In this document: piece after piece, positions 1,563 to 60,872 of the stretch
Numbering within the stretch: the first letter of the stretch is position 1
How the letters are laid out: each line of letters begins with the position of its first letter
Virus record (IMG/VR): IMGVR_UViG_3300037116_000299
Span: 62,001 to 126,000 of that record
DNA length: 64,000 bases
Reading direction: 5' to 3' (one strand)
Program-made: the position numbers and the translations under genes
The notes under the pieces: generated by a model
The model's input: the letters and a program-made list of their open reading frames with translations, nothing else
Database searches by the model: none
Told to the model about the DNA's origin: nothing

Positions 1563-1655
1563 TGATACCCCTGAACCTGACTAACAGTCAGTATGTCTTG
1601 CGGACGGTTATTTCCCTATAAGGGGAACTGCCTATATCCGTGTGAAATGCTGGTT

Positions 1656-1985
1656 CTATGCTGCTTTAGTGGTAGCGATCACACGCCCATGGCGCCGGAT
1701 CGGCGTAACCACAGCGAACTCGAGATCGAGCTGGCCTTCAGAGAAACTCTTGATGGGCACGGCACTGATCAGGTTCGCTTCACAGATCTGTTCGAGATCG
1801 ATGATCAACTTACCGGACAGGCCCCAGTCCAACTCGACCGTGAACAGTTCCTCGGCATCGAATTGCTCCCGCAGCTGGGCTCTTCCCAGCCGGATCGCGT
1901 CGGTTACAAGATCCGCACCGACACTAAAGTGCAGTTCAAGACCGGTCTTAGTCCGGTCGCCCAGACGAAACGTATATCGGTTCAT
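1656..1985 (-). CDS. hypothetical protein
   Basis: ORF MNRYTFRLG...TKAA, divergent from the XRE regulator. Confidence 0.55.
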   Translation of the reverse strand: MNRYTFRLGDRTKTGLELHFSVGADLVTDAIRLGRAQLREQFDAEELFTVELDWGLSGKLIIDLEQICEANLISAVPIKSFSEGQLDLEFAVVTPIRRHGRVIATTKAA

Positions 1986-2057
1986 ACTGTCCTTTCCCAA
2001 ACAGACTGTCAGTTGACAGGCGGTTCCATACCGTCCAACAATTGATGCAGAGGTTTC

Positions 2058-2486
2058 TTGATGCCGAAGGCAATGGGGCAGCGCACCAACACGCTCGGAG
2101 CACATATTCTGAAGCGCCGAACCGCCCTGGGGCTTACCCAGCGTGATGTTGCCCAGGCCTTAGGGCTTCGTACAGACGAGTTCGTCGGCCTGATGGAGCG
2201 AGGTCAGCGTCAGCCAAACTACGAACGGCTGCCGGAACTGGCGACTGCTCTCCAGACTCCGGTGTTTGTCCTCTTTCGCCTAGCGATCCGGGACGTCTAT
2301 CCCGGGCTGGCTCAGATCCTGTTCCGGAAAACCGTCGGCTTTCGCAAGTCCTCTCGGCCTCCGAAGACTTATGACCTCATGGACCGGCTGGACTCCTTAT
2401 CCCCGAACGTCCGGCGGACAATCATCGAGATGATCAACCGGCTGCACCAGGAACAGGATGCTCGGGCGGTGAAGAAGCGGGCGTAG
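2058..2486 (+). CDS. XRE-family helix-turn-helix transcriptional regulator
   Basis: RRTALGLTQRDVAQALG...VGLMERGQRQP HTH_3 pattern; one of very few plus-strand genes. Confidence 0.85.
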   Translation: MMPKAMGQRTNTLGAHILKRRTALGLTQRDVAQALGLRTDEFVGLMERGQRQPNYERLPELATALQTPVFVLFRLAIRDVYPGLAQILFRKTVGFRKSSRPPKTYDLMDRLDSLSPNVRRTIIEMINRLHQEQDARAVKKRA

Positions 2487-2602
2487 CGCCTGGGCAGGTG
2501 TCCAGATGATCCAGGAACTGTGAAGAAGGCACTGCGGCGCCGCATTCACACACGATCGGGCAGATGCACTTATAGCGCCGACATTCAAAACACATCGCTC
2601 CG

Positions 2603-3154
2603 TCACTCATGGAAATACGTCTCCTCGATCGTGCGATCAATCATTCCCTGCAGCTCACGGCCGATTCCAATCGAACGAAACTCCCAGTCTTGCAGGCTGG
2701 GATACGCTCGCGATTCCTTCAACTTGGTGGTCTGCACCGCCTGGCGGACCTTGAGCCCTCTCAGCATAAGCACCACAAACTGGCCATAGCTGACGGGTTC
2801 ACAAGGTAGCTTGAAGCGAATCCGGTTCACTCGTTCCAGCATGTCCGCCAGTTCCCGCGTCTCACGACCATTGGTCAGCTCATGGATGTTGGCCATTCGG
2901 AGCTGCTGGGCGTATACCCCTTTGATCTGCTGATTCCGCTCCCACTGACCCCGGAACTGAAGGTGACGAAACATCCGGGAAATAGGACGAAAGTCGTTGA
3001 GCGACTCGAGCGATTCCCGTCTCGCGTCCACCGCAACAAACCCAAACGTCAGAACTCCAAAAGGTGTATCCCCAGAAAAGGTGCAATCCAAGCCCGTCTT
3101 CGGCTCATAAAGCAGCGCGATATGCGACGGGTCATACGGCTCCCGCTTAGACAT
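2603..3154 (-). CDS. hypothetical phage protein
   Basis: ORF from MSKREPYD, coupled to neighbours. Confidence 0.6.
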   Translation of the reverse strand: MSKREPYDPSHIALLYEPKTGLDCTFSGDTPFGVLTFGFVAVDARRESLESLNDFRPISRMFRHLQFRGQWERNQQIKGVYAQQLRMANIHELTNGRETRELADMLERVNRIRFKLPCEPVSYGQFVVLMLRGLKVRQAVQTTKLKESRAYPSLQDWEFRSIGIGRELQGMIDRTIEETYFHE

Positions 3155-3407
3155 TGGGGAACATCGAACGGGTGGTAGGCTCCCGCTTCTCAACGACCGA
3201 CTGCACAAAGGTGATCTTGGCCGTGGTGATCTTGCGGCCGCGAATGGCAGGATGCTTGCGGATCTCTTTCCAGGCGCGGTTCAGCGCCAGGCCGGCGTTG
3301 CTGGCCTTGACGGTGGTGCTCTGGTAGATCCCGCCGCCCTTCAGCTCGGGGAACATGAAGTTCACGGCGAAGATGTGTTCGTTCTCTTCGTTCTTAGCTT
3401 TTGGCAC
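3147..3407 (-). CDS. hypothetical protein
   Basis: ORF in overlapping gene train with phage-like codon use. Confidence 0.6.
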   Translation of the reverse strand: MPKAKNEENEHIFAVNFMFPELKGGGIYQSTTVKASNAGLALNRAWKEIRKHPAIRGRKITTAKITFVQSVVEKREPTTRSMFPNV

Positions 3408-3810
3408 GTTTCACCTCGTAAGTATCTTGGGGCTTCCAGGCAATGATGATGTGCTTGAACTCCCACTTATCGCAGTCGTACCGGGAGACATCGACGAATG
3501 GGCCCTGAATGTTGGGACTCTCGTCGGCTGTCAGGATGAATGCCACCTGCACCCGGCCACCATGCTTCGGCGGCGTGGCGGCGCTGGTCCAACCATCTGG
3601 TGTTTCGCGCAGTTCGGCGATCTTCATGAAGACGTCGCGACTAACTCTCTTGTAATCGTCACGAAGATCATGCGAGCATGGCGGAATACGAATAGCGCTG
3701 GATAAGCTGTACGGCACGTAGTCGTGAACTGCGATCTGACAGCAACGCTTGCACACCAGGTAGTCACGGTGATAACCCTCGATCAACTCAGGTTCTTTGA
3801 GTGCCATCAC
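3394..3810 (-). CDS. hypothetical protein (CxxC)
   Basis: ORF overlapping both neighbours. Confidence 0.55.
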   Translation of the reverse strand: MMALKEPELIEGYHRDYLVCKRCCQIAVHDYVPYSLSSAIRIPPCSHDLRDDYKRVSRDVFMKIAELRETPDGWTSAATPPKHGGRVQVAFILTADESPNIQGPFVDVSRYDCDKWEFKHIIIAWKPQDTYEVKRAKS

Positions 3811-5028: not shown

Positions 5029-5038
5029 CACGTTCTCC

Positions 5039-8080: not shown

Positions 8081-8203
8081 GATTCTTGTCCTCTTTCATC
8101 CGGCTAGCACCGGGCTTAGTTACATTGCACAACATCCATGCTGACTACCAAACACCAACTGACAGTAAGTCATGGAATCTCGTAAAGCTCTAAGCGGAAG
8201 CGC

Positions 8204-8389
8204 TTAGACCTCAATCTCTATGCCGTCTTCGACAATCGAAGTGATCTCCTCACCCTTGAGGGTCTCTTCGTTTACGGGAGCGATCGTGCGATCCTTCTCC
8301 CATAGAGCTTTGGCTTCAGCGCCCGACTTTGCTTTGATCTCGTAGGTGCGCTCGATGACTCGCTGCGCGTAGATGGTGTAGGTCTTCAT
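8204..8389 (-). CDS. small hypothetical protein
   Basis: ORF with SD, coupled to upstream gene. Confidence 0.55.
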   Translation of the reverse strand: MKTYTIYAQRVIERTYEIKAKSGAEAKALWEKDRTIAPVNEETLKGEEITSIVEDGIEIEV

Positions 8390-10701: not shown

Positions 10702-11010
10702 GACTCCCTCGCGACAGGCCCGCGACCCACCTGCGCAACCTTGTTGCATGGAAAGCAGATGTAGAAGCTGGGATCCATAAATGGATCGTTCTTCTTGCAT
10801 AACAGCGTCACAGTTCCGCGGCAGTCAGGGCAGGAGGTACCTTGGGCAAGTTGCAGAATGAACTTCGATTTCGCCATCTAACGTCTCCTCAACTGATTCT
10901 TCTACCCGATCGCGAGTTCGCCTATAAGGCGAACACCGCAGATGGTTGATCACCGCGGCGGCAGCGGTTACCACGCCTGTTGCTACTTCGGCACAGATGA
11001 TGCACATGGT

Positions 11011-12282: not shown

Positions 12283-13011
12283 TTAGGATGCGCGGCCTTC
12301 ACAGGCTGGCTGGCCACAACAGCAGGTGGTCTCGCCACACGCTGTACGTCCCTTGCTCTGTACGGGCAGAATGGAGGATGCAAACACGACCCGACGTGCG
12401 ATCGCGTACATCACCAACTGCGCTTTGTTGTGGACGCCCAGTTTCTGGTACGTGTTGAACTTGTGAACTTCCACCGTCTTCACACTGATGCCCAGCATGA
12501 TGGCGATCTCCTTCACCGTGTTGCCTTCGGCCAGGAGCTTGAAGACCTCGCGCTCGCGCGGGGTCAGCTGATCGATCTTTGAGACCATAGCAGGGTTGCC
12601 GATGAACCGATCCGCCGCCGGCATGTACTTCGTCCCGCGGTGAACCCGTTCAATGGCAACCTGCAGCTCGGCGCAACTAGCTGTCAGCTCGACGACTCCG
12701 TCGGCGCCGGCCTTGACGGCCTCGATGACATGTTCTTCCTCGCCGTTCGCGGCCAGGAAGATCACCCGAAGCGTCCGATGTTGCTGGCGAGCCCACCGGG
12801 CTGCGTCATACGGATTTGGACCCGGGATCGTTGCGTCGAGAATCAGGATATCTACACCCAGGTTCACCGCCTCTTCGGCTGCCTCCCTGGCATCCCCGAA
12901 GTCGGCGAGGACGCGAATCGCGTCACTCTTGGTGAGGGTTTCCCGTACACACTCCCGCAGGAGGGTATGCTTATCGGCGATCACACAACGAATCACTAAA
13001 ACTCCAGACAA
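12283..13011 (-). CDS. NarL/LuxR-family response regulator (orphan)
   Basis: REC domain with ILILD; LTPREREVFKLLAEG...KEIA..LGISVKTVEVH. Confidence 0.9.
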   Translation of the reverse strand: MSGVLVIRCVIADKHTLLRECVRETLTKSDAIRVLADFGDAREAAEEAVNLGVDILILDATIPGPNPYDAARWARQQHRTLRVIFLAANGEEEHVIEAVKAGADGVVELTASCAELQVAIERVHRGTKYMPAADRFIGNPAMVSKIDQLTPREREVFKLLAEGNTVKEIAIMLGISVKTVEVHKFNTYQKLGVHNKAQLVMYAIARRVVFASSILPVQSKGRTACGETTCCCGQPACEGRAS

Positions 13012-13089: not shown

Positions 13090-13580
13090 GCGTGAGGTCG
13101 CTAATCGACCACCACGAGGGAGGAAGGCTCCCGGGCTTTCACCGGGATGCAGGCGACTGAGTATTCAAGTTCAACCCTTACTTGATGCCTTGTTAGGCAG
13201 CAGCGAGATACGCTGCCTCGAATGCCGCGGCCGGAGCCGGGAAAGCGAGGACTTCTGCGGTCTTGCTGGCGAGGTAACCCGTGGTGTTGGCAGTTATTCG
13301 TCGTGGTCTCCCATATCGCGGGCGGCCGACTCGGCGCGTCACCATCTTGTTCCGTATCCCGTCGAAGCCGTGACGGGCCCACCTCAAAGCTCTTGTCCTA
13401 TTGGGACAGTGGTTCAAAAGAGCGTCGAGGTGGACCCGGCGGGAGTCGAACCCGCGTCCGAAACGAAGAAGAAGATGTGTGTCTTTTCACGAGCGTTTTA
13501 GTCCATCCGTTTCCAGCGGACCAAACCCCATTGCTGGGGAAACTTGTTATGTCCACCTCCAGAGAATCGCATCGGGAAAG
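13090..13580 (-). ncRNA. ssrA: tmRNA, circularly permuted two-piece gene (acceptor piece ~13580-13431, spacer 13428-13381, coding piece 13380 to ~13090; outer ends approximate)
   Basis: 3' tmRNA end GGACGCGGGTTCGACTCCCGCCGGGTCCA lies upstream of the 5' end GGGCCCGTCACGGCTTCGACGGG; G3-U70 pair; ATAACT-GCC resume site; tag ends in YLAAA*. Confidence 0.9.
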
Positions 13581-13604
13581 ACATTGAGGTATAGGGCGAA
13601 CCCC

Positions 13605-13901
13605 TTAGACTTCGAGGTGCGTAAGCAGCTCAGTCCGTATCGTGCAACTGGCCGGCACGCCGTGACGGCCGCTGCCCCACTGCACTTGAACCTGGCCGTG
13701 AAACCCGCTCTGCCAGTTCGGACTGATCTTCAGGTCCACTGTGTGGCAACCCGCGTCCTTGCAGAGCTGCAGCACCTGGCGGCATAGCTCGGCGATGGTC
13801 GCAGGAAGCACGGGAGTCTGAAGCACCTGCAGATCGCAGGTAAGGCACTTCAGGGTGTCGCCCGCCGGGCGCGGATGTTGACAGATACAAAACTCGCTCA
13901 T
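13605..13901 (-). CDS. hypothetical protein (CxC...CxxC)
   Basis: ORF with GGAGG SD. Confidence 0.55.
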   Translation of the reverse strand: MSEFCICQHPRPAGDTLKCLTCDLQVLQTPVLPATIAELCRQVLQLCKDAGCHTVDLKISPNWQSGFHGQVQVQWGSGRHGVPASCTIRTELLTHLEV

Positions 13902-14113: not shown

Positions 14114-14326
14114 CTGAATGCAGCGCAGATACAAAAGCGCTTTGGGGATAAAGTTCGCGCAGCCAGGCTTGAGAAGGGCATTTCACAAGAGTCTCTCGCG
14201 TTTGTGTCTGACCTGGACCGGGCTTATATCGGCGGAGTTGAAAGAGGCGAAAGAAACATTAGCCTGTTCAATATCTAAAAGATAGCTCGTAGCCTTAATG
14301 TTCCAGCGAAGGACCTGCTGTCTTAG
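14114..14326 (+). pseudogene. XRE/C-protein-like HTH regulator with in-frame TAA
   Basis: [20 protein letters not shown]...[27 protein letters not shown]; stop at 14276-14278. Confidence 0.75.
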
Positions 14327-15426: not shown

Positions 15427-15437
15427 TAAGGAATCTC

Positions 15438-22157: not shown

Positions 22158-22370
22158 CGGACTCCTTTTTCTTGTCTTCTAAGCTGTCGACATACGCATC
22201 CATCGCTGACCAGTCAACAGCCAGTGGATCGTGACAAAGCGCCGCGATGCCTCCGAAGAGCACGGCAATGATGGCAAGGAACTCAAGTAACTCGCGCATG
22301 ACGATGCCTTTCTGGGATCACCTTGGCTACGGTAACGCACATAGCCAGGGCAAACCCTAAGTTGAAACTC

Positions 22371-22739
22371 TTACCACCAGACACTCACCTTGACGATGGA
22401 GGTCTGGGGATTGAAGTGATGCTTACGGAGGAACTGCTTGTACTCCTCGATCGCTTCTTCGACGGTGGGCTTGACACCCTTGCGCGCTTCGATGAACTTG
22501 GTGACGGCTGCATGGTCGCCGCCTCCGAAGGTAGTGCCCAGTGAGAAGATGCGCTCTTCGAAGAAGGCGCGCTGTTCGGCCGTGACCTTCGCCGGATCGA
22601 TGTCATCGATGCTGATGCTGTGGGTCAGGTCATTACCGGTGCCCCGCGTCAGCATGAACATCAGGTGATAAATCGGTGGGGTCACATCGTCGTCGTACAC
22701 GTCAAAGCAGGGTTCAGCCTTCATTACTTTCCGTCCCAT
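22371..22739 (-). CDS. hypothetical protein
   Basis: ORF overlapping the SpoU gene. Confidence 0.55.
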   Translation of the reverse strand: MGRKVMKAEPCFDVYDDDVTPPIYHLMFMLTRGTGNDLTHSISIDDIDPAKVTAEQRAFFEERIFSLGTTFGGGDHAAVTKFIEARKGVKPTVEEAIEEYKQFLRKHHFNPQTSIVKVSVWW

Positions 22740-24153: not shown

Positions 24154-24402
24154 GTGGGTTGGTGACCGATACTTGATACCGCGCCTCGGATCAGGACGCC
24201 ATTCACCATTACTGCCATTTTCAACACATGCTGAAACAGAACAATCGGGTGAAACACCTAAGAAGGGAGGCGGGAGTTGCGCCCGCCGGTCGCGCCAACC
24301 CGTTCTGCTCAACGGACAGCCTGTAGCAACCATCGGAGTAGCAGCTCCGGTTGCATGCGTTGGACCGATACTTAGAGTCGCCTCGGTCTCCAGGGCGCTG
24401 CT

Positions 24403-29224: not shown

Positions 29225-29749
29225 TGTGTTTGTCCCTTTCAAGGAGAACTGCTGCGCGTTTTGTTAGCCGGGTTCGCGCCCACCGGTCAAATTGGGGACG
29301 CCATGGCTTCTTGCAAAGTCATAGCGCACCTCCACCACCAGCAGTAAAGGCTACTGGTCCTGTTCCCCGATTGTTACGGATCGGGGACCGTGCAGACATC
29401 GGGTAAAACCCTTAGCTGCTTGCATACATCTGAGGTCCTGCTGCTCAAGATCCATACTGGCCCCTGAGCAGCAACTACCAAAGCTATGCGGCCTTCTTTG
29501 CTGCGTGAACGCATTCTTGTGCGATCACCTTCAGCAAATTCGATGTTGCCGTCTGACCCAGGACTTCGCCCTGGAGTTCTCGGATCTTCGACCCGAGACT
29601 GGTTACCATCTGGTTGTGACACTTCAGACACACGGCTCGCTTCATCCGCTGAGTTGTGCATGCGGTACAAGTAAGCGCTGACATTTGCAGTTTCGATTTC
29701 CTGCTTCTGGGAGAATCCATTGGTTGACCCTCGGTGCTTCACAGCATCG

Positions 29750-32991: not shown

Positions 32992-33004
32992 GTATTCCTT
33001 TCGG

Positions 33005-38501: not shown

Positions 38502-38549
38502 GTGTTTACCTTAGAAACTTAGGAGGGATTTGGGACTAGGGTGAACTAC

Positions 38550-39104
38550 TTAGGCAGCTGCCAGGATGGCCTTCTGCTTGTCGCTGTAGAAAGCGATCAG
38601 CTTCTGCATGACATCCTGTGCAGACTGGACCGTCAGGGTGCCTTTGCTGTGGACTCCGATTGGAGTGCCGATGCCACGGCAGATCCGAATTCCCTGCCCT
38701 GTTCCGCCGCCGCCGTCGCGGCCGGGCAGAGCCAGGCACGCTGTCGCGCCGTCCACGATCCCATAGTTGCGGGCATGCAAGGCAAAGGGGCCGCGCGACA
38801 AAGCCGCAGGATTGGGATGGTACTTGGTGACCGACTCAGTCCAGAGCGGATGGTGCTTCGGGTCATAGACCGTGCAGGCCGCCAGCGACGGAATCTTGTT
38901 CCGGTTGTAGCTGCCCCAGGGAAGAAATACGTCCAGCAGTCCGGGCTTGGCGCCCATCATGGCCAGGTAATCGATGCCGTCGGCACCGCCGGTACGGATC
39001 CTGACGCCTAACTGCGTGCTCAACGTCCAGGCAACCTCCTGGGCCAGGTCGATCTGAAACAAGTCCGGTTCGCGCGTGCCAATGATTGCCAGGCTCAGGT
39101 CCAT
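38550..39104 (-). CDS. SLOG/DprA-like Rossmann-fold protein
   Basis: AIIGTRE, RTGGADGID, FLPW, HARN, GGTGQGIR. Confidence 0.75.
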   Translation of the reverse strand: MDLSLAIIGTREPDLFQIDLAQEVAWTLSTQLGVRIRTGGADGIDYLAMMGAKPGLLDVFLPWGSYNRNKIPSLAACTVYDPKHHPLWTESVTKYHPNPAALSRGPFALHARNYGIVDGATACLALPGRDGGGGTGQGIRICRGIGTPIGVHSKGTLTVQSAQDVMQKLIAFYSDKQKAILAAA

Positions 39105-40375: not shown

Positions 40376-41374
40376 GAAGCAATCTCCTCAGTTACGGTGA
40401 CGGTCGTAACCCTCACCAAGCGCTTGGGCAAAGAGTCCTCGCGCTTCCAGCGTTTCAGCCACAAGTGACCTTCCTTCAAGGTCTCCGGCCGATCGCGCAG
40501 CAGTTCCATTGGACCGTTCGACGTGATCACCTGGATCTCAAGGTGCTCCTTCAGTTCAATCTTCGGATTCACTGATCCTCCTTGGGGCGATCTTCAGCTT
40601 GGCACGCTGTCTTACCACCGACTGCTCATGCGCAGCCTGTGCTGCTGCCGCTGTACGTGCCGCTCTACAGTCCGGACAGGGTTGCCACTTGTCGTGCTTC
40701 CGACAACGCTCTTCTTCATCGCGTGAGTAAAGTCCATACATTCAGCGCACTCTCGCATATTGCCCGCAACCAGGACAGTAGACGCCGGTCCAATCAGTCA
40801 ACGCGGTCTTGAAATGGACCTGGGCGCCGCAGCACGGTGTTGCTGTCTCATAGGGAACGGATTTAGGCACAAGTGCAGCTTCAACAACCAGGTTCAATAG
40901 GGTCACGATGTTCTCTTTCTGCACAGTAAAGCCGCGACCATGGCCGCGGCGATAAGGGGAACCACTTAGACTGGGCTAGCGCAGACCGATGAGGAACGGC
41001 ATTCGAGCCTCAGCATCAGCCTTAGTGCGCGACGTAGTCGCCTCCATGGCGCGGCCATTGTCATCCAGCAACATGTACCGATAGCTCGGCATGTACTCGC
41101 TGGTGAGAGCTGAAAGGTTGAGGGCCGCTCGCTGGGTCGACCCTTTCGGATGGTTCAGCGCTTCAAACGTGCGCCTCACTGCCATCATGATGTAGCCACC
41201 ATTTCCTCTTCTGCCGGAGCACTAGCCCCGCTTCGTGATCGCTTTCCCGATGATCAGCACGGCAATGATGGCTACCGGGATGCTGATGACCGACGCAGCG
41301 CACATTAGGGCAGGAATGATGATCCAACCCAGGCACACAAGGACGATGAATCCCAGGAAAACCCTGCCCATGCT

Positions 41375-43858: not shown

Positions 43859-45466
43859 TCAGCGTCTCCAGCCCTGTGCGGCTATCAGGGCATACTTCGT
43901 TCGCATCATCTCTTCTTGATCGCCGCCAGCCAGGCTTTCGGCGTACATGTACAGGCCCGCTTCGGTGTTGCCCTTGCCCTCATGGAATCCCATGAAGACG
44001 CCGGCGCGTGGTGCACCGCGCGCAGTCAGCTCCTGCACCTGGATCTTGACCGTGGATCCCTGGACCAGCTCTCGATGGTTCCAGATCCACTCCCGTTGCT
44101 GATCCGGTATGGCGAATGAGCCAACCTCACCGATCGCACCGTTCGCGGGGTTCTGGACTACCAGCTTGCCGACAGAATCGGCATACTTCCCGGAGCCGGG
44201 CAGAACTTCCACCAGCACCAGGTCAGCAAAGTCCACCTGCTTGACCTTGAACCAGGTCTCGCCGGTGGGATCGCCGGCATCCTTGATCACGACGCCTTCG
44301 CCGAATGGCAGAGGCAGACGCACGATTGAGTTGTAGAACGCGACTGGGTCATCACCTGCATCCATCTTCTGGACCATGTCCCAGTTCCGGTTGTAAAACC
44401 GGATCTCACGAACTACTTTCTCAGCCAGGGCCCGGCGTTGGGCATAGGGTAAACCGCTTACGTCACGTCCTTTGTATTTGACCAGGTCCCAGCAGTGGGC
44501 CTGCACGGGACCGCGCTGAAGCTGCACATCTTGTGCGCGTCCGGGAAGCGCGTTGAGAATTCCCGCAACACGATGCACGCCGTCTGGGTGGACAAGTTCA
44601 ACCTTGCCGACAGTGCCGTCAAGATCGGGGTATGGCATGAGTTTGCGTGAGGACCAGTAGCGTGAGGTGTTGTGGAGATCTTCGAGTGCGGGAATTCGAT
44701 CATAGTAGGTCTGACCACCCTCCCGGTGGCTGTGAAATACTGCCTTGCCCTTGCCGATCTTGAAGTTGCCGAGCGATCCATCTTCCTTCTGCTCGACAAT
44801 CCAGCGCTCGCCGTTCGCATTGTCCAGGCGGACCTGATCCAGGAACGCCGCGGGCTTGAGCGAGTACGATGGCTTCTCGATCACCGGGCCTTCGTCTTTC
44901 AGCATCAGGGATAGAAATCCCTTGGCAGTCTTGACGATGGCGTAGCGGCCTTTGAAATCCCCGTTGGGGATGTTCAGCTCGAACTGCTCTGTTCCAGGCG
45001 GCAGGCCGGCAACTGCGAGGTCATAATGCAAGCCAGCAACGTCCGCGTCGTGGACGTGATATTCAACCCTTCGGAGCGATGTTTGTGCTCCGACTTTGAC
45101 AGGTATTCGGCCAGTAAAGAGAAGGCTCTTTCTTCCCTTACCGTAGCCGGACTCGATGACTCCATTGAATCCCTCCAGGGTATGCGGGCCATTCTCGATG
45201 ACCAGGTGGCGCTCGCCGGCCTTGGGCAGGCCCTTGGGCAGCGTGTACTTGGCGCCGGCCTCTGGGGGCCTAACACCGCCCAGAATACCGCCATCGACCG
45301 TACGGGCTGCCCAGAGGTTGCTGGTGGCCCATCGGCTGGCCTCCCGGCCCAGCGTGCGCGTAACGACGCGGCTGGTGCCCGGGAGCACGACAGCGCTCAG
45401 AAGATCAAGCGCATTCTCTTTGCCCCACAGAATCGCCGCGCGGGTGAGTGTTCGTACGAATCCCAT
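43859..45466 (-). CDS. ATP-dependent DNA ligase with N-terminal LigD-type 3'-phosphoesterase elements
   Basis: KEDG, WDL, EGVVIK, WFKVK, OB domain; HVHDA..LHYDL, LPKG and GYGKG. Confidence 0.82.
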   Translation of the reverse strand: MGFVRTLTRAAILWGKENALDLLSAVVLPGTSRVVTRTLGREASRWATSNLWAARTVDGGILGGVRPPEAGAKYTLPKGLPKAGERHLVIENGPHTLEGFNGVIESGYGKGRKSLLFTGRIPVKVGAQTSLRRVEYHVHDADVAGLHYDLAVAGLPPGTEQFELNIPNGDFKGRYAIVKTAKGFLSLMLKDEGPVIEKPSYSLKPAAFLDQVRLDNANGERWIVEQKEDGSLGNFKIGKGKAVFHSHREGGQTYYDRIPALEDLHNTSRYWSSRKLMPYPDLDGTVGKVELVHPDGVHRVAGILNALPGRAQDVQLQRGPVQAHCWDLVKYKGRDVSGLPYAQRRALAEKVVREIRFYNRNWDMVQKMDAGDDPVAFYNSIVRLPLPFGEGVVIKDAGDPTGETWFKVKQVDFADLVLVEVLPGSGKYADSVGKLVVQNPANGAIGEVGSFAIPDQQREWIWNHRELVQGSTVKIQVQELTARGAPRAGVFMGFHEGKGNTEAGLYMYAESLAGGDQEEMMRTKYALIAAQGWRR

Positions 45467-48283: not shown

Positions 48284-51201
48284 TTATGGCTCGAGAGCGA
48301 ACATGAAGCGCTGGGAGTTCTGGTCCACGTTCCACTTGTTGACCAGCTGGTACGCTTCCAGGATCGGCATGCCACTCATGGTGGACATGCCGACTTCTCT
48401 GAAGTGAGATTCATCGAATGGCAGCCGTTCCACAGAATCGGTGGCCAGAAGCTTTCGCAGATAGTGAGTGAATCGCATTAGACTCGGTCCTCGAACATGC
48501 TGTCGAACGTGCCGCTCCCGAATTCAACATCGGTAGCCAGCTGGTGCAGCTCATCGGCCGTGAATGGACGGAATGTAGGTGCTGCCGGCCGCGCGACGGT
48601 GAAGCTCTTGTCCTGAATGGCGGCGTTCCTACCGCGCTGAGAAACCAGCACGCTGGGTACGCTAACCACACCACCGCCGATCAGTCTGCCGTTCATACGG
48701 AAGGTGACGTAGCGGATGTTGGTGTCAGCCAAGTTGGTGTGAACTCGCAGGCCTACCACGCTGCGCGGGAAAGCCTTGCAATCGTAATCCCGCTCCCAGC
48801 CGTTGGAAATGCGACGGCGGACCCGGCGGACCCAGGAATCGGCTCCGCGAATCTCGCGAGTGAACACGTCCTTGGATCGTGGTAAGAACGATGCTGAGTT
48901 GGATGTTGCCACAGCGAGCGGGGCGTTGGCAGCCCAGAGTTGATCGATGATGTCGGGAGTGATCCACTCACGAATGGCGCCTCGAACGGCGTCAGAGATT
49001 CCTTTGCCTTGGCTCATGCTGCTTTCACCTCCGGGTGAATTCCTGTGGGCTTGGACGGCGTAATCAAATACATCCAGCCTCCGATCTTCGAGGTAGGCCG
49101 GTAATGCTTGGAACCGAAGGTGTCCAGCACAAACCACTGGCCAACACCCTTCGCATCGTGGCCGCCGACCATCCACCCGGCGACGACAATGTCGTCGCCC
49201 GTGTACCAGATCCAGGCTAGCCGGTCCGGCATCGATGGCTTGAGCGGGCTTTGCAGGATGACATCGACCAGGCCCGCCTGGCGCTTGAATTCCTGCAGCT
49301 CCTGCTGATCGCAGTGATAACAGCCACGCTGAGGTACCGCGCTGGCCGTGGTGTAGTGGTGATCGGCGCTGTGCTCGCAGCCGTTGGTCCGGCCCAGCTC
49401 CTGGAGTTCATTCATGACGCGGCTGCGATTGGTATCGAGCCCGCGGTACTCAAGGCGCTTCGCCTCGGACTGTTGATTCACTTCCGTCCAGTTCATGATT
49501 TCCTTCCTTGGTTCAATTCGAGGAGCTAGGGCACCCTTTGCACAAGGCGCCCGAGAGGGTTGAGCCGATCACGGATCTCCGCTTCGTGGCTGTCTCTCTT
49601 GTCGCTCCAACACGGCCTGACATCTACGCGCATGCGCTATGCGCTCCGCCGACCGTGCATTCTCAATCTCGCGGCAGGGCTGGTTTTCACCAGCCCCACC
49701 TTGATGTCTGAAGACCCCGGGCAGTCCACGATCGGGATAGTTGTCCGGCACTCAATGTCCGGACTCCCTACGGTGAAGACTGTGGTTCCCTTCGCTTCAG
49801 ACTGCCGTGTTTATGGGCGTCTCGTTGAGCTGTTTTCGTGCCAGGGCAACCACAGCACGATACAGCGCATACTTCTCGTTGCAAGTCATGACCATGAGGC
49901 TGTGAGCTACCTTGCCTCGGGCGTACTCGGTGTCCTGTACCTCAGCCATAACGTCCGAGTCGTCGAACCAGAAGCGTTCGGACGGCAACGGGGGCAGGAT
50001 ACTCGCCGAAGGACTGGGCTGCAGCTTCCTGATCGCCTCGTCGTATCCCTCAAGCCGGGCAACACGTTGTCCGTTCTCGGAATCGGTGACCAGGGCTGTG
50101 AATTCTTCCAGACTGATGAGCTTCGCTTCGAACAGCTCGTGCCGCTGGTAGCGAACGAGGTCAGTCAGGCGCTGGGTCTGTTGCGCGAGATGCTCGATCG
50201 CGATGCCCATGTCCATACGCGGAGCCGTCTTCCACTCCTTTGCTAGCTGCAGATACTTGTCCAATTGGGTCGCCCTTTCAGTTGAGTGCCTGGTATACGA
50301 GGCAGAAGCCTGTGCGGCAGACCAACTGCCTCGTATATCAGGTCGTGTGCTTGGAGGTCCTGAGACATCTGCGCACCAGGATGGAAGCCGCGCGTCTCGA
50401 TCAGGACAGGTTGGGCGGGTGACTCCAAGCTGTGATCACCATATCGGTTGGCCGAAGCCAATCGAATAAGGTGAAACTACTAGACCCGTTGGAGATAGGA
50501 GTCACGAATCTCGTCGAGGGTGAACATGGTGCCACACCCTGTCTCGTCATCCCCACACACGAAGGGTGGAAAGAACTTCGCCGCACGCAGGTCAGTCATG
50601 TCGTCGAATCCGCATGCAGGGCATTGGAGCGTGTATTCGTAGGACTTCAGTTCCCGGCCGTCTTCCGGCGCGGGATAGACCATATTGAGGTCCTGGTTGT
50701 AGATCAGCTTGGCCATGATGTCCTTACGCTGCTGCTGCTGCTGGTGGTTGAGCGGCAAACAGCGGCCGCCGGGTGGTAATAAGCTCTGCCTTCAGGGCGC
50801 GGGAGCGCTTGACTTCAAAGTCAGCAGCTTCGTCACCCTTCAGCAAGATCGTCGTGGTGGGCGTGCCCACTCTTACAGTGTCCGGCGATCGAGCGATGTG
50901 CGAGCACATGTCCAGGTTGATGTCGACGTCGTGGCCATCGCTGCGACGCACCGTGATCCAGTTAGCCATGCAGGCCTCCTCAGGCTTTCAGCTCGGCCTT
51001 CAGCTCTGGCACCTTGGCCAGCTCCGCAGGGTCATTGGTCGCCAGCGTTCCAGCTGACTCCCAGGTGGACTTGTAGTTCTGGCTGGATTTCACCAGCAAG
51101 TGGATGCTGTCAGAACTGACCGCCAGCGAGCCCAGCCGCTGATTCGCATCGTTAGCGATCAGTTGCTTGATCTCGCGTTCGGTGTAGGTGATGGTGACCA
51201 C
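48284..51201 (-). other. train of hypothetical genes (48284-48478, 48478-49017, 49014-49496, 49797-50264, 50480-50716, 50724-50969, 50980-51201)
   Basis: Coupled ORFs, many with SD sequences. Confidence 0.5.
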
Positions 51202-54655: not shown

Positions 54656-54678
54656 GAGAATATCTCCTTGTTCCAAAC

Positions 54679-54704
54679 TAAAAGCCCCGGGGTTAGCCGG
54701 GGCT
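54679..54704 (-). terminator. intrinsic terminator
   Basis: AGCCCCGG-CTAACC-CCGGGGCT followed by TTT. Confidence 0.65.
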
Positions 54705-54726
54705 CAGGTGAACTACTTAGGCCTGG

Positions 54727-56110: not shown

Positions 56111-57106
56111 GGTCCCAGCATGCAGCGCCAGGTGAATGTACCAAAGGCCGGGGCTTTCACCCCGGCTCCTGGCTGAGGAGTTCATTAGCGGCTCTTCATA
56201 AGCGTACCTCCGTTGGCAAGCGTGCCAACTACCGGTTTCATGGACGGGACCGGCTCCCGACCTGCACTCGTGATCTCTCGTCCGAACATGCAGGGTGATT
56301 CCACACAGACTGGTGGCGATGAAACTGAATGCGGTCGACACGCTATCCGTGATGCGACCAGTCCGCTTACTCTTTGTTACCTGTGTCTCCACTTGCTTCG
56401 CTGGTCATCATTTGAAGTGGCGACCAGGGTCCAATTCCCTGTGCCAAATCTTCGATGCGAAGGGCATACGGCCAGTGTGGCCGTAACAGGTTCCGAACGA
56501 AGCGTAACCGGAACCGTCCCCAACTTCATTGTGTCCGTGATGTCCCACCGGTCCCACACCGCGAGTGCGAGTGCGAGCAGGAACCACAGACAGAGATCAA
56601 TCAGGCGCATGAATACCCCGATCCACCAGTTAGGCCTTGCGGTGAGCCTTGTTCGCAGCCTTGCGGCGGTTGCCGCGCGAGCGTTGCGAAACCTTGGACT
56701 TGCCGTTGGTGCATTTGAACTGACGTGGACGGCCGCCGCCGCCGGACGGCGTTGCAGCCTCGATGGATGGCATGCCGGCGCCAAGCGAACTGGCGAGGGC
56801 GGTGAGTACAGCAGCTGAGTTCATGTCGTCTTCTTTCTTGAGTTCGATGACGCGTTGAGATGCTTCCAGAATGCCTGGCAGGAGGGTGCCAACCAAAGCT
56901 GCATTGGTAGCCACCAGGACGCGCCGTTTGGTATCCAAAATGACCCTTCCTGACCCGCTGGTTACCGGGTTGAGACAAGTTTGCCTATACTAGAGCGGGA
57001 AAACAGTAGGGTGAAAACCGTAGTTCCACTCCAAAAGCTCCAGTGGAGGGTAGGGGAACATGCCATTCCCCACCCTCCGCATGGACAAAGTCGAACCTTA
57101 GCTCGA

Positions 57107-58678: not shown

Positions 58679-58894
58679 GATGAAGCTCCATGACCTGTTC
58701 GAGGTCAGTGCTGCAGGTTAGTAAACCGAGGTGGCGGAGACGGCCGCGTTGGTCGCGGTGTTGTTGGACTTCAGGAAGGCGGCGAGGATAAGCGCAGTGA
58801 TGACCCCGGCGATTATCCGAACAAGGATCGAGGCGATGAACGTAGCCATGGACTGCTCCAGCTTGGATTTGACAACCGATGAATCTGAAACGGG

Positions 58895-58912
58895 ATAGGG
58901 TGAAACACTTAG
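58895..58912 (-). promoter_or_regulatory. representative copy of recurrent 18-bp intergenic motif CTAAGTGTTTCACCCTAT
   Basis: About 13 same-orientation copies across the window (see findings). Confidence 0.7.
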
Positions 58913-58984
58913 AGACCCGACGCCGGGACAGGAAGGAGAATGGACCCATCCCGGCGCTCCAGCACACTGAGTGCGCTGGAAAAC

Positions 58985-59236
58985 TTAGCGCCGCTTGGCC
59001 TGCCGCTTCTGCGGCTTGCCGAACAGCACCTCGGAGACCGCCGCGTCGAAAGCGCGCGTGAAGGGCATGGTCTTGAGGGTGTGCTGCAGCTTGGGAGCCA
59101 AGCCTGGCAGCGCAGTGTGCGCGGAACGAACCACGGTGTTGCGACCAACATCGGTGGTAGCCGCCGCAAGGTTGTGGACAAAGCCGTCACGAATCAGCTG
59201 ACGGCCATCGGGGTTGAGGGTGGCAACATTGAGCAT
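58985..59236 (-). CDS. hypothetical protein
   Basis: GGAGG SD. Confidence 0.55.
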   Translation of the reverse strand: MLNVATLNPDGRQLIRDGFVHNLAAATTDVGRNTVVRSAHTALPGLAPKLQHTLKTMPFTRAFDAAVSEVLFGKPQKRQAKRR

Positions 59237-59955
59237 GGAACTACCTCCGTGGGATAAACAACATCAGGTGAGTGGAGCAGGGCTCAACACTCAGAACTAT
59301 GCGGCGTCAACACTAGGCTCGTAAGACAGTCGGCCAGCCCCGAAGGGCCCCGTAATGTCCGGAGAGGGTTTGCGTATGTAGCCGCTTCACATGCTGAATC
59401 TGACATCTTGCCGTGCCGTACCAGATCGGTAGTCCCGCCACAAGAACCGGCTCAAGTCCGGGTTATGACGGCCGCCTGGGCAGCGCTGTCGCTAGTCAAG
59501 ATTCGAGGGACATATCTCGCCCTCATTGCAGGTGGAAAGGGTCGGGGTGATTGGCTCACCCCTTGAAGCCTTACAGCTTGGCCGGCGGCGTGGAACGCAC
59601 CGGATTGACCACAACAGGCTTGGGGCCTGTGTAGTCCGTCCCGTACTCACGACGGAACGAGGTTGGCATACAGCCAGCCAGCATGGTGCGCTGACTGGTC
59701 TCAAGCCGCCGCGCAAAACCTGCGGTGGCGCAACGGGGCGTAACTGCATGACGAACAGCTGCCATGGCAATCTCCTTGAAGCGTTGAATTGTGGGTGGGC
59801 GTTACAGGATTGAAACTACCGGCTCTGCCAGGGCAGGACCGGGATGTCGGGGAAGTCGTTGATCAGCTCTTCGATTGAGCCAACGTAGCGATGAAGCCGG
59901 CCGCCACAGAGGACGGCCAGCTCACCAGCAGGCGACATGAATGCCGCGGTGGCCA

Positions 59956-60378
59956 CTAGAACCGAACCCAGTGAGGACGGATCGTGCTGTCAGCACTGAG
60001 GAATTCCTCATGGAATGAACCACCGAAGCGGCAGGTGATGGCATAGTCCACGAACTCCTTGGCCTCTCGAAGCGAGGCTGTCGGAACGATCCGGCGAACG
60101 TGCTTGATAGCCACGATCTTGTTATGCCGCATACTGTCGAAGGTCTGGATGAAGATGGCCAGGCTCTTCTGCGCATCCGAGGTCAGCGCTTCCAGCGGAT
60201 TGCCGGGAAAGACGGCAGGCGGAGGAGTGGGAAAGCCGAGCATGAGGTTCTGAGCGAACGCCATGGTGGAACGAGCTTGGGGCTCGTCGAGACCCTCGAC
60301 TGTGAGGTCGAAGTGCGAGGGCGCACCGGCCGGAGCGAAAGGCGCTTCCGACCGAGAGAGGTGAATTGAACCGAGCAT
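59956..60378 (-). CDS. ribosomal protein L7/L12 C-terminal-domain-like protein
   Basis: NKIVAIKHVRRIVPTASLREAKEFVD. Confidence 0.65.
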   Translation of the reverse strand: MLGSIHLSRSEAPFAPAGAPSHFDLTVEGLDEPQARSTMAFAQNLMLGFPTPPPAVFPGNPLEALTSDAQKSLAIFIQTFDSMRHNKIVAIKHVRRIVPTASLREAKEFVDYAITCRFGGSFHEEFLSADSTIRPHWVRF

Positions 60379-60584
60379 GGATGCTCTCCTTGTTGCAGGG
60401 TGTTGAAACAAACGGTGGTGCAGTGAGCGGAGCCAGGCTCAACGCTCGAAACTTGCGGCCCTGTACCCGACAGGGCCTGCAGTGGTGCGACCGCGGGCGT
60501 CAGAGATACACCCAGGGTTTGCTACGTGGAGAATCAGTAGAAAGGTTGGAGGATGGGGGTAGAGAAACCCATCGGGTGAAACTC

Positions 60585-60872
60585 TTAGGCGTGGGCACAC
60601 TGTACGGCTTGAACGCCGTACTGCGTAATCACGAAGGCAGTCCAGGGCTTGACACGATCAAGAAGAGCCTGCAGCTGATCCCGGACAGCGAGATAGAAGG
60701 GGCCCATGCACAGCCTGAGTCCTTCAACAGCGGTGGCCTGAGCGTTGAGATAATCTCCAAGCGCTTCATACTTCAGAGCTTCCTCGAAGTACAGCTCACC
60801 ACGGGTCTTGGCCATCGACTTGATGGCCCTGCTAACGCAGAGCATGTGCTCTTCGGTTGGGGTGCGGTACAT
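60585..60872 (-). CDS. hypothetical protein
   Basis: GGAGG SD before MYRTP. Confidence 0.55.
   Translation of the reverse strand: MYRTPTEEHMLCVSRAIKSMAKTRGELYFEEALKYEALGDYLNAQATAVEGLRLCMGPFYLAVRDQLQALLDRVKPWTAFVITQYGVQAVQCAHA

What the first reader, a model, noticed from the sequence alone, without database searches (positions are those of the whole stretch)
1618..60588. Recurrent asymmetric 18-bp motif: candidate promoter for the phage RNA polymerase
Seen (minus-strand reading): 1618 ATAGGCAGTTCCCCTTAT; 8190 CTAAGCGCTTCCGCTTAG; 13591 CTAAGGGGTTCGCCCTAT; 22345 CTTAGGGTTTGCCCTGG; 24244 CTTAGGTGTTTCACCCGAT; 29398 CTAAGGGTTTTACCCGAT; 38536 CTAAGTAGTTCACCCTAG; 40952 CTAAGTGGTTCCCCTTAT; 50466 CTAGTAGTTTCACCTTAT; 54703 CTAAGTAGTTCACCTGAG; 57006 CTACGGTTTTCACCCTAC; 58895 CTAAGTGTTTCACCCTAT; 60571 CTAAGAGTTTCACCCGAT. 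All are intergenic or overlap an upstream stop codon, and all point with transcription. They lie ahead of recD2, ssb, tmRNA, tRNA-Trp, thyX and others. None was seen in the foreign island. Inference: a directional, non-sigma70, essentially non-palindromic element fits a promoter for the encoded YonO-like polymerase, or an activator site.
Basis: partly seen in the sequence, partly recalled or inferred. Interest (0 to 1): 0.8.

Follow-up and report, generated by a model that had tools for sequence, protein, structure and literature searches.

The report
Two-part phage promoter with 18-bp box
The repeated 18-base motif is real and is the upstream half of about sixteen two-part promoters in a large phage related to Caulobacter phages. 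A second element that looks like a bacterial -10 box sits 22 bases downstream, so the motif is more likely a docking site for a phage activator of the host RNA polymerase than the phage polymerase's own promoter.

Summary
Observation confirmed. All 13 sites exist. The consensus CTAAGnGkTTCACCyTAT (about 20 bits) gives 12 hits against 0.55 expected, all on the gene strand. I count 16 sites in the window; 15 are intergenic or overlap a stop codon.

The box is kept in syntenic relatives: 13 gene-strand hits in 56.6 kb of one (RNAP 37% identical), some at orthologous gene junctions. It is absent from an RNAP-less Caulobacter phage module. It shows no hairpin covariation.

New: 27 of 30 sites carry A-N3-T 23-25 nt downstream (chance 0.13 per site, P about 3e-21), then purines 7-8 nt later. 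This matches the bacterial -10/+1 pattern. It puts the box at about -52 to -35 (centre -43.5), with no -35 hexamer.

The encoded polymerase is confirmed as a two-barrel (QDE-1/YonO-class) enzyme of 1032 aa.

- Favoured (0.5): the box, a quasi-dyad TAAG-N8-CYTA, binds a phage activator that recruits host sigma70-type RNAP. The conserved phage REC+GerE regulator at 12283-12996 is a candidate.
- Main rival (0.3): the same promoter is read by the phage two-barrel RNAP.

No transcription start site was mapped.

The parts
61120..61165 (-). Promoter unit: box CTAAGGGCTATCCCTTAT (61148-61165), 22-nt spacer holding a hairpin, hexamer CAAGCT (61120-61125). Predicted +1 at about 61113. First unit downstream of the RNAP gene.
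   Evidence: PWM 18-19 bits; A-N3-T at offset 24
60543..60588 (-). Promoter unit: box CTAAGAGTTTCACCCGAT, whose TAA is the stop codon of gene 60585-60872; hexamer CAACCT.
   Evidence: Metatranscriptome depth rises from about 2 to about 12 just downstream.
58867..58912 (-). Promoter unit: best-scoring box CTAAGTGTTTCACCCTAT; hexamer TCAAAT (C in place of the usual A).
   Evidence: The orthologous gene junction in the relative also has a box (rel 12250).
56978..57023 (-). Promoter unit: box CTACGGTTTTCACCCTAC; hexamer CAAACT. Overlaps the single-copy conserved element CCGCTCTAGTATAGGCA (56982-56998).
54675..54720 (-). Promoter unit: box CTAAGTAGTTCACCTGAG. A terminator-like hairpin fills the spacer. 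Hexamer TAGTTT overlaps its U-tract.
   Evidence: The orthologous junction in the relative keeps box, hairpin (with compensatory changes) and hexamer.
50438..50483 (-). Promoter unit: box CTAGTAGTTTCACCTTAT, whose TAG is the stop codon of gene 50480-50758; hexamer TATGGT.
44415..44461 (-). Box GTAAGCGGTTTACCCTAT plus hexamer GAAAGT, inside the ligase-like ORF 43859-45466. Either an internal promoter or a look-alike kept by the protein code.
   Evidence: The same place in the orthologous ORF of the relative also scores 18 bits; the differences fall mostly at codon third positions.
40923..40969 (-). Promoter unit: box CTAAGTGGTTCCCCTTAT. A terminator-like hairpin fills the spacer. Hexamer TACTGT.
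38508..38553 (-). Promoter unit: box CTAAGTAGTTCACCCTAG, whose TAA is the stop codon of gene 38550-39104; hexamer TAAGGT. Predicted +1 is the A of the thyX ATG (38501), so the mRNA may be leaderless.
29370..29415 (-). Promoter unit: box CTAAGGGTTTTACCCGAT; hexamer AACAAT.
24217..24261 (-). Promoter unit between tRNA-Met and tRNA-Trp: box TTAGGTGTTTCACCCGAT; hexamer GAAAAT (spacer 21).
22329..22374 (-). Promoter unit: box GTAAGAGTTTCAACTTAG, whose TAA is the stop codon of gene 22371-22724; hexamer TACCGT.
13563..13608 (-). Promoter unit ahead of the permuted tmRNA gene: box CTAAGGGGTTCGCCCTAT, whose TAA is the stop codon of gene 13605-13901; hexamer GATTCT.
10896..10941 (-). Weaker probable unit: box CTGCGGTGTTCGCCTTAT; hexamer AAGAAT.
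   Evidence: PWM 13-16 bits; intergenic; A-N3-T at offset 24
8162..8207 (-). Promoter unit: fully palindromic box CTAAGCGCTTCCGCTTAG, whose TAA is the stop codon of gene 8204-8389; hexamer TACTGT.
1590..1635 (-). Promoter unit ahead of recD2: box ATAGGCAGTTCCCCTTAT; hexamer CATACT.
12283..12996 (-). Phage response regulator (REC + GerE/LuxR-type helix-turn-helix). Candidate box-binding activator; this is inferred and was not tested.
   Evidence: Pfam GerE 2.7e-21, Response_reg 2.4e-14. A 47% identical ortholog sits at the same place in the relative.
61695..64000 (-). C-terminal 768 codons of a 1032-aa two-barrel, single-chain RNA polymerase; the gene runs off the window end. Rival candidate reader of the promoters.

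Best explanation
The 18-bp box is the upstream half of a two-part promoter that recurs about every 4 kb along the gene strand of the phage's DNA-metabolism, tRNA and small-ORF arm.

Anatomy, shown from sequence:
- box CTAAGnGkTTCACCyTAT;
- a spacer of 22 +/- 1 bp with no conserved sequence, in some copies filled exactly by a terminator-like hairpin that serves the upstream gene;
- a hexamer nAnnnT;
- purines 7-8 nt after the T.

Inference: the hexamer is a -10 element (A-11, T-7) read by a sigma70-type holoenzyme, presumably the host's. There is no -35 hexamer. The box lies at about -52 to -35 (centre about -43.5). It is a pseudo-palindromic site (TAAG-N8-CYTA) for a phage-encoded dimeric activator that stands in for the -35 contact. 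The geometry is that which I recall for phage Mu Mor/C and LuxR-type class II activators. The result would be a phage 'middle' regulon that switches on once the activator is made.

The best candidate activator is the conserved phage REC+GerE response regulator at 12283-12996. This step is the least supported.
For: 1. The box is real, strand-specific and intergenic. Beyond the window end the gene strand flips, and the one box found there flips with it (L001:4364).
2. The downstream element: A-N3-T at offsets 23-25 in 27 of 30 sites from three or four phages. Background is 0.129, binomial P about 3e-21. 19 sites have it at exactly offset 24 (background 0.044). 78% purines at each of the two positions 7 and 8 nt after the T, and 63% pyrimidines just before.
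3. Nothing is conserved where a -35 hexamer would lie. Complete sigma70-type promoters are not enriched in the window: 5 against about 16.5 expected, and none on the gene strand.
4. No start codon lies closer to a box than the predicted +1. The thyX ATG is exactly at it, and one ATG in the relative is 1 nt from it. An apparent exception disappears once the start codon is corrected.
5. At 54703, 40952 and the ortholog in the relative, a terminator-like hairpin fills the spacer and its U-tract overlaps the hexamer. If transcription starts after the hairpin, the tightly following gene can be expressed.
6. The best conserved box positions form the dyad T2A3A4G5 / C14Y15T16A17. The half-sites match the RcsB box TN(G/A)GA-N4-TC(T/C)NA of a GerE-type regulator (PMC7913699).
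7. A REC+GerE regulator is encoded in both box-bearing phages at the same syntenic place. tblastn found no Caulobacter-phage record carrying a homolog, and the Caulobacter phage module scanned has no box.
8. The box is nearly unchanged between phages whose RNAPs are only 33-37% identical. It is missing from L004, whose RNAP is the sister of a box-bearing phage's RNAP.
9. The element spans 46 bp (156 Angstrom). From general knowledge, that fits a holoenzyme plus activator better than one 115-kDa chain.
Against: - No transcription start site was mapped. The only transcript data are low-depth metatranscriptome contigs. Their ends lie within 20 nt of all four boxes tested, but with mixed polarity.
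- Hexamer position 1 is T in only 9 of 27 sites and position 5 is mostly C or G, so apart from A and T the match to a -10 element is weak.
- In two short-leader cases the hexamer could instead be a ribosome-binding site (TAAGGT; AGGAG).
- The strongly conserved asymmetric centre (TTCAC) is not what a simple symmetric dimer site predicts.
- The regulator's binding was not tested, and other phage DNA-binding proteins are equally possible.
- The host and its sigma70 consensus are unknown.
- A two-barrel RNAP encoded in the same arm, just upstream of the first box, remains an obvious alternative reader.
Confidence: 0.5

Rival explanations
1. The same two-part element is the promoter of the phage's own two-barrel (YonO/QDE-1-class) RNA polymerase, acting alone or with a phage specificity factor. 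Host RNAP would make the polymerase from the early operon at the divergent region. The polymerase would then transcribe the box-bearing arm.
For: - The polymerase is real and conserved.
- Its gene is the third gene after a divergent intergenic region and has no box upstream. The first box follows it in the window, in the relative and in L032, where the box overlaps the RNAP stop codon.
- Box-bearing genomes all encode this RNAP. The RNAP-less Caulobacter phage CcrBL10 module has no hit of 12 bits or more in 50 kb.
- Precedent: the two-barrel RNAPs of phage P23-45 each have a recurrent promoter motif, and the non-virion enzyme transcribes early and middle genes (PMC10770324).
- Two exact box patterns give four hits in the 214-kb contig, all inside the window, so this is a regulon local to the polymerase's arm.
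Against: - The A-11/T-7-like hexamer with a purine start 7 nt later is the hallmark of sigma70-family recognition. Nothing known predicts it for a sigma-less single-chain enzyme.
- The element spans 46 bp.
- RNAP-bearing L004 and L007 have no box in about 10 kb downstream of the gene, and the RNAP tree does not group the box-bearing lineages.
- The box is unchanged across RNAPs that are 33-37% identical. T7-type polymerases that far apart differ in promoter (my own knowledge).
Confidence: 0.3
2. The box is a roadblock or repressor site of the 'stoperator' kind: an asymmetric site bound by a phage repressor that stops elongating polymerase. It may also be a negative operator overlapping promoters.
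For: The box is asymmetric, co-oriented with transcription, scattered through short intergenic spaces and often overlaps stop codons. From my own knowledge, this is the distribution described for Cluster A mycobacteriophage stoperators.
Against: - A roadblock site does not explain the fixed-distance -10-like hexamer and purine start.
- The boxes sit ahead of genes that must be expressed, including tRNA and tmRNA genes.
- I did not see an integrase or immunity repressor in the window or in the relative's 56.6 kb. The list was truncated.
Confidence: 0.07
3. The box acts in RNA, as a sequence-specific termination signal, a processing site or a stability element at the 3' ends of upstream genes.
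For: - The box hugs upstream gene ends: the gap is -4 nt in six cases and 6-20 nt in three.
- Metatranscriptome contigs end inside or just after the box at 57006 and 61148.
- Hairpins often follow the box.
Against: - There is no base-pair covariation in either hairpin register: 57.7% of cells paired against 57.6% in shuffles.
- Folding propensity is the same on both flanks, with mean z about -1.1 each.
- At 54703 and 38536 there is no room for another promoter before a gene that must be expressed.
- An RNA role does not explain a conserved A-N3-T 24 nt away with a non-conserved spacer.
Confidence: 0.06

Closest known systems
Activator-dependent phage middle and late promoters read by host sigma70 RNAP (Mu Mor at Pm and C at the late promoters; T4 MotA box). 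Recalled from my own knowledge, not checked in a paper here.
   Same: A good -10 element, no -35 hexamer, and a phage-specific box replacing or abutting the -35 position. For Mu, an imperfect dyad centred near -43.5. Many copies define a temporal gene class.
   Different: The box sequence is unrelated. Here there are 16 or more copies in 64 kb of a phage with a 214-kb contig. The candidate activator is a REC+GerE response regulator, not a Mor/C or MotA-type protein. No transcription start or binding data exist.
RcsB box, TN(G/A)GA-N4-TC(T/C)NA, of the GerE/NarL-family response regulator RcsB (PMC7913699)
   Same: A pseudo-palindrome with half-sites TNRG...CYNA, bound by a dimer of a REC+GerE regulator and commonly placed in promoter regions.
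   Different: The half-sites are 2 bp further apart here (TAAG-N8-CYTA). The centre, TTCAC, is strongly conserved and asymmetric. The phage regulator is only a generic family member (about 30% identity to bacterial response regulators).
Promoters of phage two-barrel single-chain RNAPs (P23-45 gp96 virion and gp64 non-virion enzymes, PMC10770324; SPbeta YonO, PMC5467207)
   Same: The phage encodes a two-barrel RNAP of the same structural class. A recurrent motif marks a gene class. Relatives without the enzyme lack the motif.
   Different: The P23-45 motifs were sought within -30 to +1 of mapped starts. Here the box would lie at -52 to -35 with a sigma70-like -10. The YonO promoter sequence is still undefined and only one start is known. 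Box presence here does not track the RNAP tree.
Stoperators of Cluster A mycobacteriophages (my own knowledge)
   Same: Asymmetric, co-oriented with transcription, dispersed in short intergenic gaps and often overlapping stop codons.
   Different: Those sites are 13-14 bp repressor sites of temperate phages and have no associated -10 element. Here a -10-like hexamer sits at a fixed distance, and I saw no integrase or immunity repressor.

Membership tests
Class II activator-dependent sigma70-type promoter | -10 hexamer with conserved A at position 2 and T at position 6, at a fixed distance from the activator box | tested here: met
   A-N3-T at offsets 23-25 in 27 of 30 sites, P about 3e-21. Plus-strand and most weak PWM hits lack it.
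Class II activator-dependent sigma70-type promoter | Purine start about 7 nt after the hexamer, confirmed by a mapped transcription start | tested here: inconclusive
   78% purines at each of the two positions 7 and 8 nt after the T. The thyX ATG lies exactly at the predicted +1. No 5' ends were mapped, and the metatranscriptome contigs are too sparse.
Class II activator-dependent sigma70-type promoter | No -35 hexamer; the activator site abuts or overlaps -35 (centre about -41 to -44) | tested here: met
   Nothing is conserved at the positions 17 bp upstream of the hexamer. The box centre is 32.5 nt upstream of the conserved A, which gives -43.5 if that A is -11.
Class II activator-dependent sigma70-type promoter | A sequence-specific activator that binds the box and contacts host RNAP | not testable with these tools
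   A candidate REC+GerE regulator is present and conserved. Binding and activation need EMSA or in vitro transcription.
Promoter of a phage-encoded RNAP (T7-type or two-barrel type) | The genome encodes the polymerase | tested here: met
   1032-aa two-barrel RNAP. No other large polymerase-like ORF is in the window. The rest of the 214-kb contig was not read.
Promoter of a phage-encoded RNAP (T7-type or two-barrel type) | The motif co-occurs with the polymerase across relatives and follows its divergence | tested here: not met
   Present in the window phage, the relative and L032, and weakly in L033. Absent from L004, L007 and L008, which all carry the RNAP. The tree puts L004 (no box) as sister to the relative (box). 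The sequence available for the negatives is only 1-10 kb downstream of the gene.
Promoter of a phage-encoded RNAP (T7-type or two-barrel type) | Initiation at or just after the motif by that enzyme, independent of host RNAP | not testable with these tools
   Needs start-site mapping with rifampicin, or in vitro transcription.
Two-barrel (double-psi beta-barrel) RNAP, YonO/QDE-1 class (for the protein) | Two-barrel fold and an invariant metal-binding acidic motif | tested here: met
   AlphaFold model pLDDT 91.9. Foldseek: QDE-1 2e-13, RDR2 4e-11, P74-26 gp62 3e-5, phi14:2 gp66 1e-3. GGDMDD with D531, D533 and D534, plus K191 and K274, are invariant in 74 family members.
Two-barrel (double-psi beta-barrel) RNAP, YonO/QDE-1 class (for the protein) | Sequence-level match to Pfam RdRP (PF05183) | tested here: inconclusive
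   The window protein has no Pfam or PHROG hit. Three of 41 distant family members match PF05183, best E 1.5e-10. The protein atlas's nearest clusters are PF05183.
Intrinsic terminator or hairpin element (including N4-type hairpin promoter) | A stem kept by compensatory changes | tested here: not met
   Two registers tested on 24 sites. The fraction paired and the covariation do not exceed shuffles.
RcsB/NarL-type pseudo-palindromic box | Half-sites TNRG and CYNA in inverted orientation with 6 bp between them | tested here: not met
   The half-sites are present: T2 and A3 24/24, G5 19/24, C14 23/24, A17 24/24. The spacing is 8 bp, not 6, so this is a resemblance, not membership.
CtrA box (TTAA-N7-TTAA) of alphaproteobacterial phages | Two TTAA half-sites 7 bp apart | tested here: not met
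   By inspection of the box alignment A6. The second half-site position reads ACCC.

The most novel reading that the evidence does not exclude
The two-part element is read by the phage's single-chain two-barrel RNA polymerase. If so, this phage group would supply the first multi-copy promoter consensus for a YonO/QDE-1-class DNA-dependent RNAP, with more than 30 aligned sites. It would also show that such an enzyme uses an upstream box plus a -10-like A...T melting element and a purine start. That is the geometry of cellular multisubunit RNAPs, achieved without a known sigma factor.
Probability: 0.3. Interest if true: 0.85.

Novelty: new variant of a known kind. Interest (0 to 1): 0.6.

Why it matters
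- It defines a regulon of 16 or more promoters, and its exact architecture, in an uncultured 214-kb relative of the Caulobacter phiCbK-like phages. These phages carry a two-barrel RNA polymerase that tblastn did not find in any of the 50,697 GenBank phage records searched.
- Either outcome is useful. If a phage response regulator redirects host RNAP through a -43.5 box, that is a new kind of phage middle-gene switch. If the two-barrel polymerase reads the promoters, the long-open question of how YonO-class enzymes find promoters becomes directly testable, with a ready-made consensus of more than 30 sites.
- The box-spacer-hexamer design also shows how this phage packs a terminator for one gene inside the promoter of the next.

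Tried and rejected
- **Hairpin or terminator reading of the box:** two registers show no covariation. Both flanks fold equally well.
- **CtrA box** (raised by PMC9437464): the half-sites do not fit.
- **Sigma70 -35 reading of TTCACC:** it lies 26 bp from the hexamer, which is too far.
- **Fixed -10 immediately after the box:** none. The conserved element is 22 bp away.
- **L007's repeated CTAAGTAATTGAA** (five exact copies, three of them in tandem paralogs): it resembles the 5' half of the box but lies only 14-20 nt from start codons and has no hexamer at the right distance. I did not count it as support.
- **L004:** only weak partial matches.
- **De novo 12-mer neighbour counts on the relatives:** uninformative.
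Contig ends lie near all four boxes but with mixed polarity, so no start site can be called.
- **RNAP protein against solved-structure sequences:** nothing.
- **RNAP protein against GenBank phages:** nothing.
- **Response regulator against GenBank phages:** only generic hits of about 30% identity, none in Caulobacter phages.
- **Whole-genome scan of the 214-kb contig:** not possible. It was replaced by two exact-pattern scans of IMG/VR.
rejected in favour of 22357.

Full report
**1. The observation**

The consensus CTAAGNNNTTCACCCTAT with up to three mismatches matches 12 times, always on the minus strand, against 0.55 expected from shuffles.

A matrix trained only on the sites above 40 kb recovers 10 minus-strand and 2 plus-strand hits in the other 40 kb. 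The Markov null gives 1.08 for both strands. The motif carries about 20 bits. T2, A3, T9, C14 and A17 are invariant among the window sites.

Nearly all genes in the window run on the minus strand: 116 of 121 in my own codon-usage gene caller. The boxes are intergenic or overlap a stop codon. In six boxes the box's own TAA or TAG is the stop codon of the upstream gene.

I add sites at 61148, 44444 (inside the ligase-like ORF) and, more weakly, 10924. I move the '22345' site to 22357-22374.

**2. What the genome is**

The window is part of a 214,300-bp IMG/VR contig. Only one gene shows nucleotide similarity (about 70%) to Caulobacter phiCbK-like phages. The window carries:
- RecD2, a ligase-like protein, an RNA ligase, polynucleotide kinase (PNK) and a CCA-adding enzyme;
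- ThyX, peptide deformylase and thioredoxin;
- eight tRNA genes found by ARAGORN, a ninth tRNA-like match in Rfam at 26313-26435, and a permuted tmRNA gene;
- a low-coding-score island with a Ser/Thr kinase gene, with TPR repeats also found in this batch of ORFs.

**3. The polymerase**

The ORF at 61695 runs off the window. The full protein has 1032 aa. It has no Pfam or PHROG hit.

A profile of it and three homologs finds 163 cluster representatives. In 74 full-length members, K191, K274 and the GGDxDD aspartates D531, D533 and D534 are invariant. Three of 41 distant members match Pfam RdRP PF05183.

The AlphaFold model is confident (pLDDT 91.9, pTM 0.87). Foldseek places it with QDE-1 (E 2e-13), plant RDR2, the non-virion RNAP gp62 of Thermus phage P74-26 (3e-5) and the crAss-like phi14:2 virion RNAP (1e-3). 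tblastn found no match to it in the GenBank phage collection.

Beyond the window end, the gene is the third of a unit that starts at a divergent intergenic region. No box lies upstream of it. The other arm, on the opposite strand, holds one box, and that box is co-oriented with the genes there.

**4. Conservation**

A Logan contig (called 'rel' here; loci L030, L031, L096, L097 and L098; 56.6 kb read) is syntenic with the window. Its RNAP is 37% identical to the window's, and other proteins are 24-67% identical.

A matrix built from window-phage sites alone finds 13 hits of 12 bits or more in rel, all on the gene strand. Ten are intergenic or overlap a stop codon.

Boxes sit at orthologous gene junctions:
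- 58895 corresponds to rel 12250;
- 54703 corresponds to rel 15985;
- 60571 corresponds to rel 11231;
- 44444 corresponds to rel 22750, inside the ligase ORF.

The surrounding intergenic DNA has otherwise diverged.

L032 (RNAP 33% identical) has a 20-bit box overlapping the RNAP stop codon. L033 has a weak one.

The homologous 50-kb module of Caulobacter phage CcrBL10, which lacks the RNAP, has no hit of 12 bits or more. Across 658 kb of unrelated IMG/VR loci, only about three hits occur beyond the one match by which each locus was selected.

In the 214-kb contig, two exact box patterns match four times, all inside the window. About nine further hits would be expected outside it at equal density.

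**5. It is not a hairpin**

On 24 aligned sites, neither plausible stem register pairs more often than shuffled columns (57.7% against 57.6%). Both flanks show the same mild folding propensity. Selection therefore acts on the primary sequence.

**6. The key new finding**

Aligning 20 nt upstream and 30 nt downstream of the boxes showed two more conserved columns: an A 24 nt and a T 28 nt after the box.

Allowing a shift of one position either way, 27 of 30 sites from the window phage, rel and L032 have A-N3-T there. The background frequency is 0.129 and P is about 3e-21. Nineteen sites have it at exactly offset 24.

The hexamers include TACTGT, GATACT, CATACT, GACACT, TACCGT, TAACGT, TATTCT, TATGGT and TAGTTT. 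The positions 7 and 8 nt after the T are each 78% purine, and the position before them is 63% pyrimidine.

None of the four plus-strand hits has the A-N3-T, and only three of the seven weaker minus-strand hits checked do.

This is the pattern of a sigma70-family -10 element (A-11, T-7) with a purine start. On that reading the box spans about -52 to -35 (centre -43.5). Nothing is conserved where a -35 hexamer would sit.

**7. Consequences that fit**

- No start codon lies nearer to a box than the predicted +1. The thyX ATG (38501) is exactly at it, and one ATG in rel is 1 nt from it. The single apparent violation, PNK in rel, disappears when the start is moved to the GTG that aligns with the window ortholog and has its own ribosome-binding site.
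- At 54703, 40952 and rel 15985, a terminator-like hairpin exactly fills the 22-nt spacer, and its U-tract overlaps the hexamer. This solves a puzzle: a terminator placed between the motif and a closely following gene makes sense if the hairpin ends the upstream transcript and the new transcript starts after it.
- Complete sigma70-type promoters are scarce in the window, and none is on the gene strand.

**8. Who reads it?**

The box's best conserved positions form the quasi-dyad TAAG-N8-CYTA around an asymmetric centre. A dyad abutting the -35 position with a good -10 element is the geometry of class II activators; from memory, these include Mu Mor/C at -43.5 and the lux box at -42.5.

The window encodes a REC+GerE response regulator just after the tmRNA gene. 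Rel has a 47% identical ortholog at the same place. tblastn found no homolog in any Caulobacter-phage record. The RcsB box of a GerE-type regulator has the same half-sites, 2 bp closer together (PMC7913699).

Against the phage polymerase as reader:
- the sigma-type hexamer;
- the 46-bp span;
- an unchanged box across polymerases that are 33-37% identical;
- no box in L004 and L007 despite their RNAPs, with L004's RNAP sister to rel's in the tree.

For the phage polymerase as reader:
- the gene sits at the head of the box-bearing arm;
- box and RNAP co-occur in three or four lineages;
- there is the P23-45 precedent of two-barrel RNAPs with their own recurrent promoters for early and middle genes (PMC10770324);
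- the YonO promoter is still undefined (PMC5467207).

I put host sigma70-type RNAP plus a phage activator at 0.5, the phage RNAP at 0.3, a roadblock or repressor site at 0.07, and an RNA-level signal at 0.06.

**9. Transcript evidence**

Metatranscriptomes from permafrost and soil hold this phage, but only as low-depth contigs. Depth rises from about 2 to about 12 just downstream of the 60571 box. Contig ends lie within 20 nt of all four boxes examined (60551, 58913, 61133, 57012). Two look like 3' ends and two like 5' ends, and none coincides with the predicted +1. I treat this as weak support for transcript boundaries at these units and nothing more.

**10. Verdict**

The element is a conserved two-part promoter, not a bare 18-mer. 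In kind it is a new variant of activator-dependent phage promoters. If the rival holds, it is a new variant of phage-RNAP promoters.

Noticed in passing
L030:9270-9385, L004:13061-13190, L007:11832-11945, L033:3505-3630, L008:8016-8140; window counterpart about 61166-61694: A structured non-coding element directly follows the two-barrel RNAP gene in five divergent lineages. It has four hairpins, an invariant CCUGAUGA, and 11 base pairs kept by compensatory changes. It has no Rfam family. The window's 530-nt gap after the RNAP gene is transcribed in a metatranscriptome (depth about 9) but lacks the CCUGAUGA string.
   Followed up: partly
L001:8140-8245 and L030:5090-5195 (divergent region upstream of the RNAP operon): About 70 nt of non-coding sequence ahead of the first gene of the RNAP operon is nearly identical between two phages whose proteins are only about 40% identical (GGAGACACCAGGTAATCAGT...CCACCCGGTCCTAAT). 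Part of it resembles a tRNA T-arm. It could be an early promoter or leader, or a tRNA-like element.
   Followed up: no
window 56982-56998 (-); L030 about 14500; L004 about 15120: A single-copy element, CCGCTCTAGTATAGGCA (core TAGTATAGG), is conserved in three phages, with a conserved stretch downstream (GGTAAYTCACGATT in two of them). It may be a strong stand-alone promoter or a small RNA gene. In the window it overlaps the spacer of the 57006 unit.
   Followed up: partly
window 12283-12996 (-); L098:11601-12212: A phage-encoded REC+GerE (LuxR/NarL-type) response regulator is conserved at the same place after the tmRNA region. By eye, the receiver domain keeps the phospho-acceptor Asp, but I could not find the usual conserved Lys motif, so it may act without phosphorylation.
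   Followed up: partly
window 13102-13521 (-) and 26313-26435 (-): There is a permuted (two-piece type) tmRNA gene (Rfam RF04321, 68.7 bits). A 123-nt tRNA match in Rfam was missed by ARAGORN, which suggests a tRNA with an insertion or intron.
   Followed up: no
window about 14200-19800: A stretch with low coding score relative to the rest of the phage holds a Ser/Thr protein kinase gene (18202-19344); Pfam TPR-repeat hits from the same batch of ORFs probably belong to a neighbouring ORF.
   Followed up: partly
L007:13135-15066: Five exact copies of CTAAGTAATTGAA lie 14-28 nt upstream of small genes; three precede tandem paralogs. The string resembles the 5' half of the box but has a different geometry. 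An ATGGCT hexanucleotide repeat also runs through these genes.
   Followed up: partly
window 59532 and 60159: Metatranscriptome contigs carry Illumina adaptor sequence directly abutting these positions. That implies many cDNA fragments ended there, so these may be discrete RNA ends inside or next to the gene-poor stretch 59237-59570.
   Followed up: no
window 32053-38501 (-): An RNA-repair and nucleotide cluster is conserved in order with the relative: ThyX, PNK (kinase-phosphatase), CCA-adding enzyme and an Rnl1-type RNA ligase. It lies alongside the tRNA set and may be a counter-measure to host tRNA-cleaving defences.
   Followed up: no
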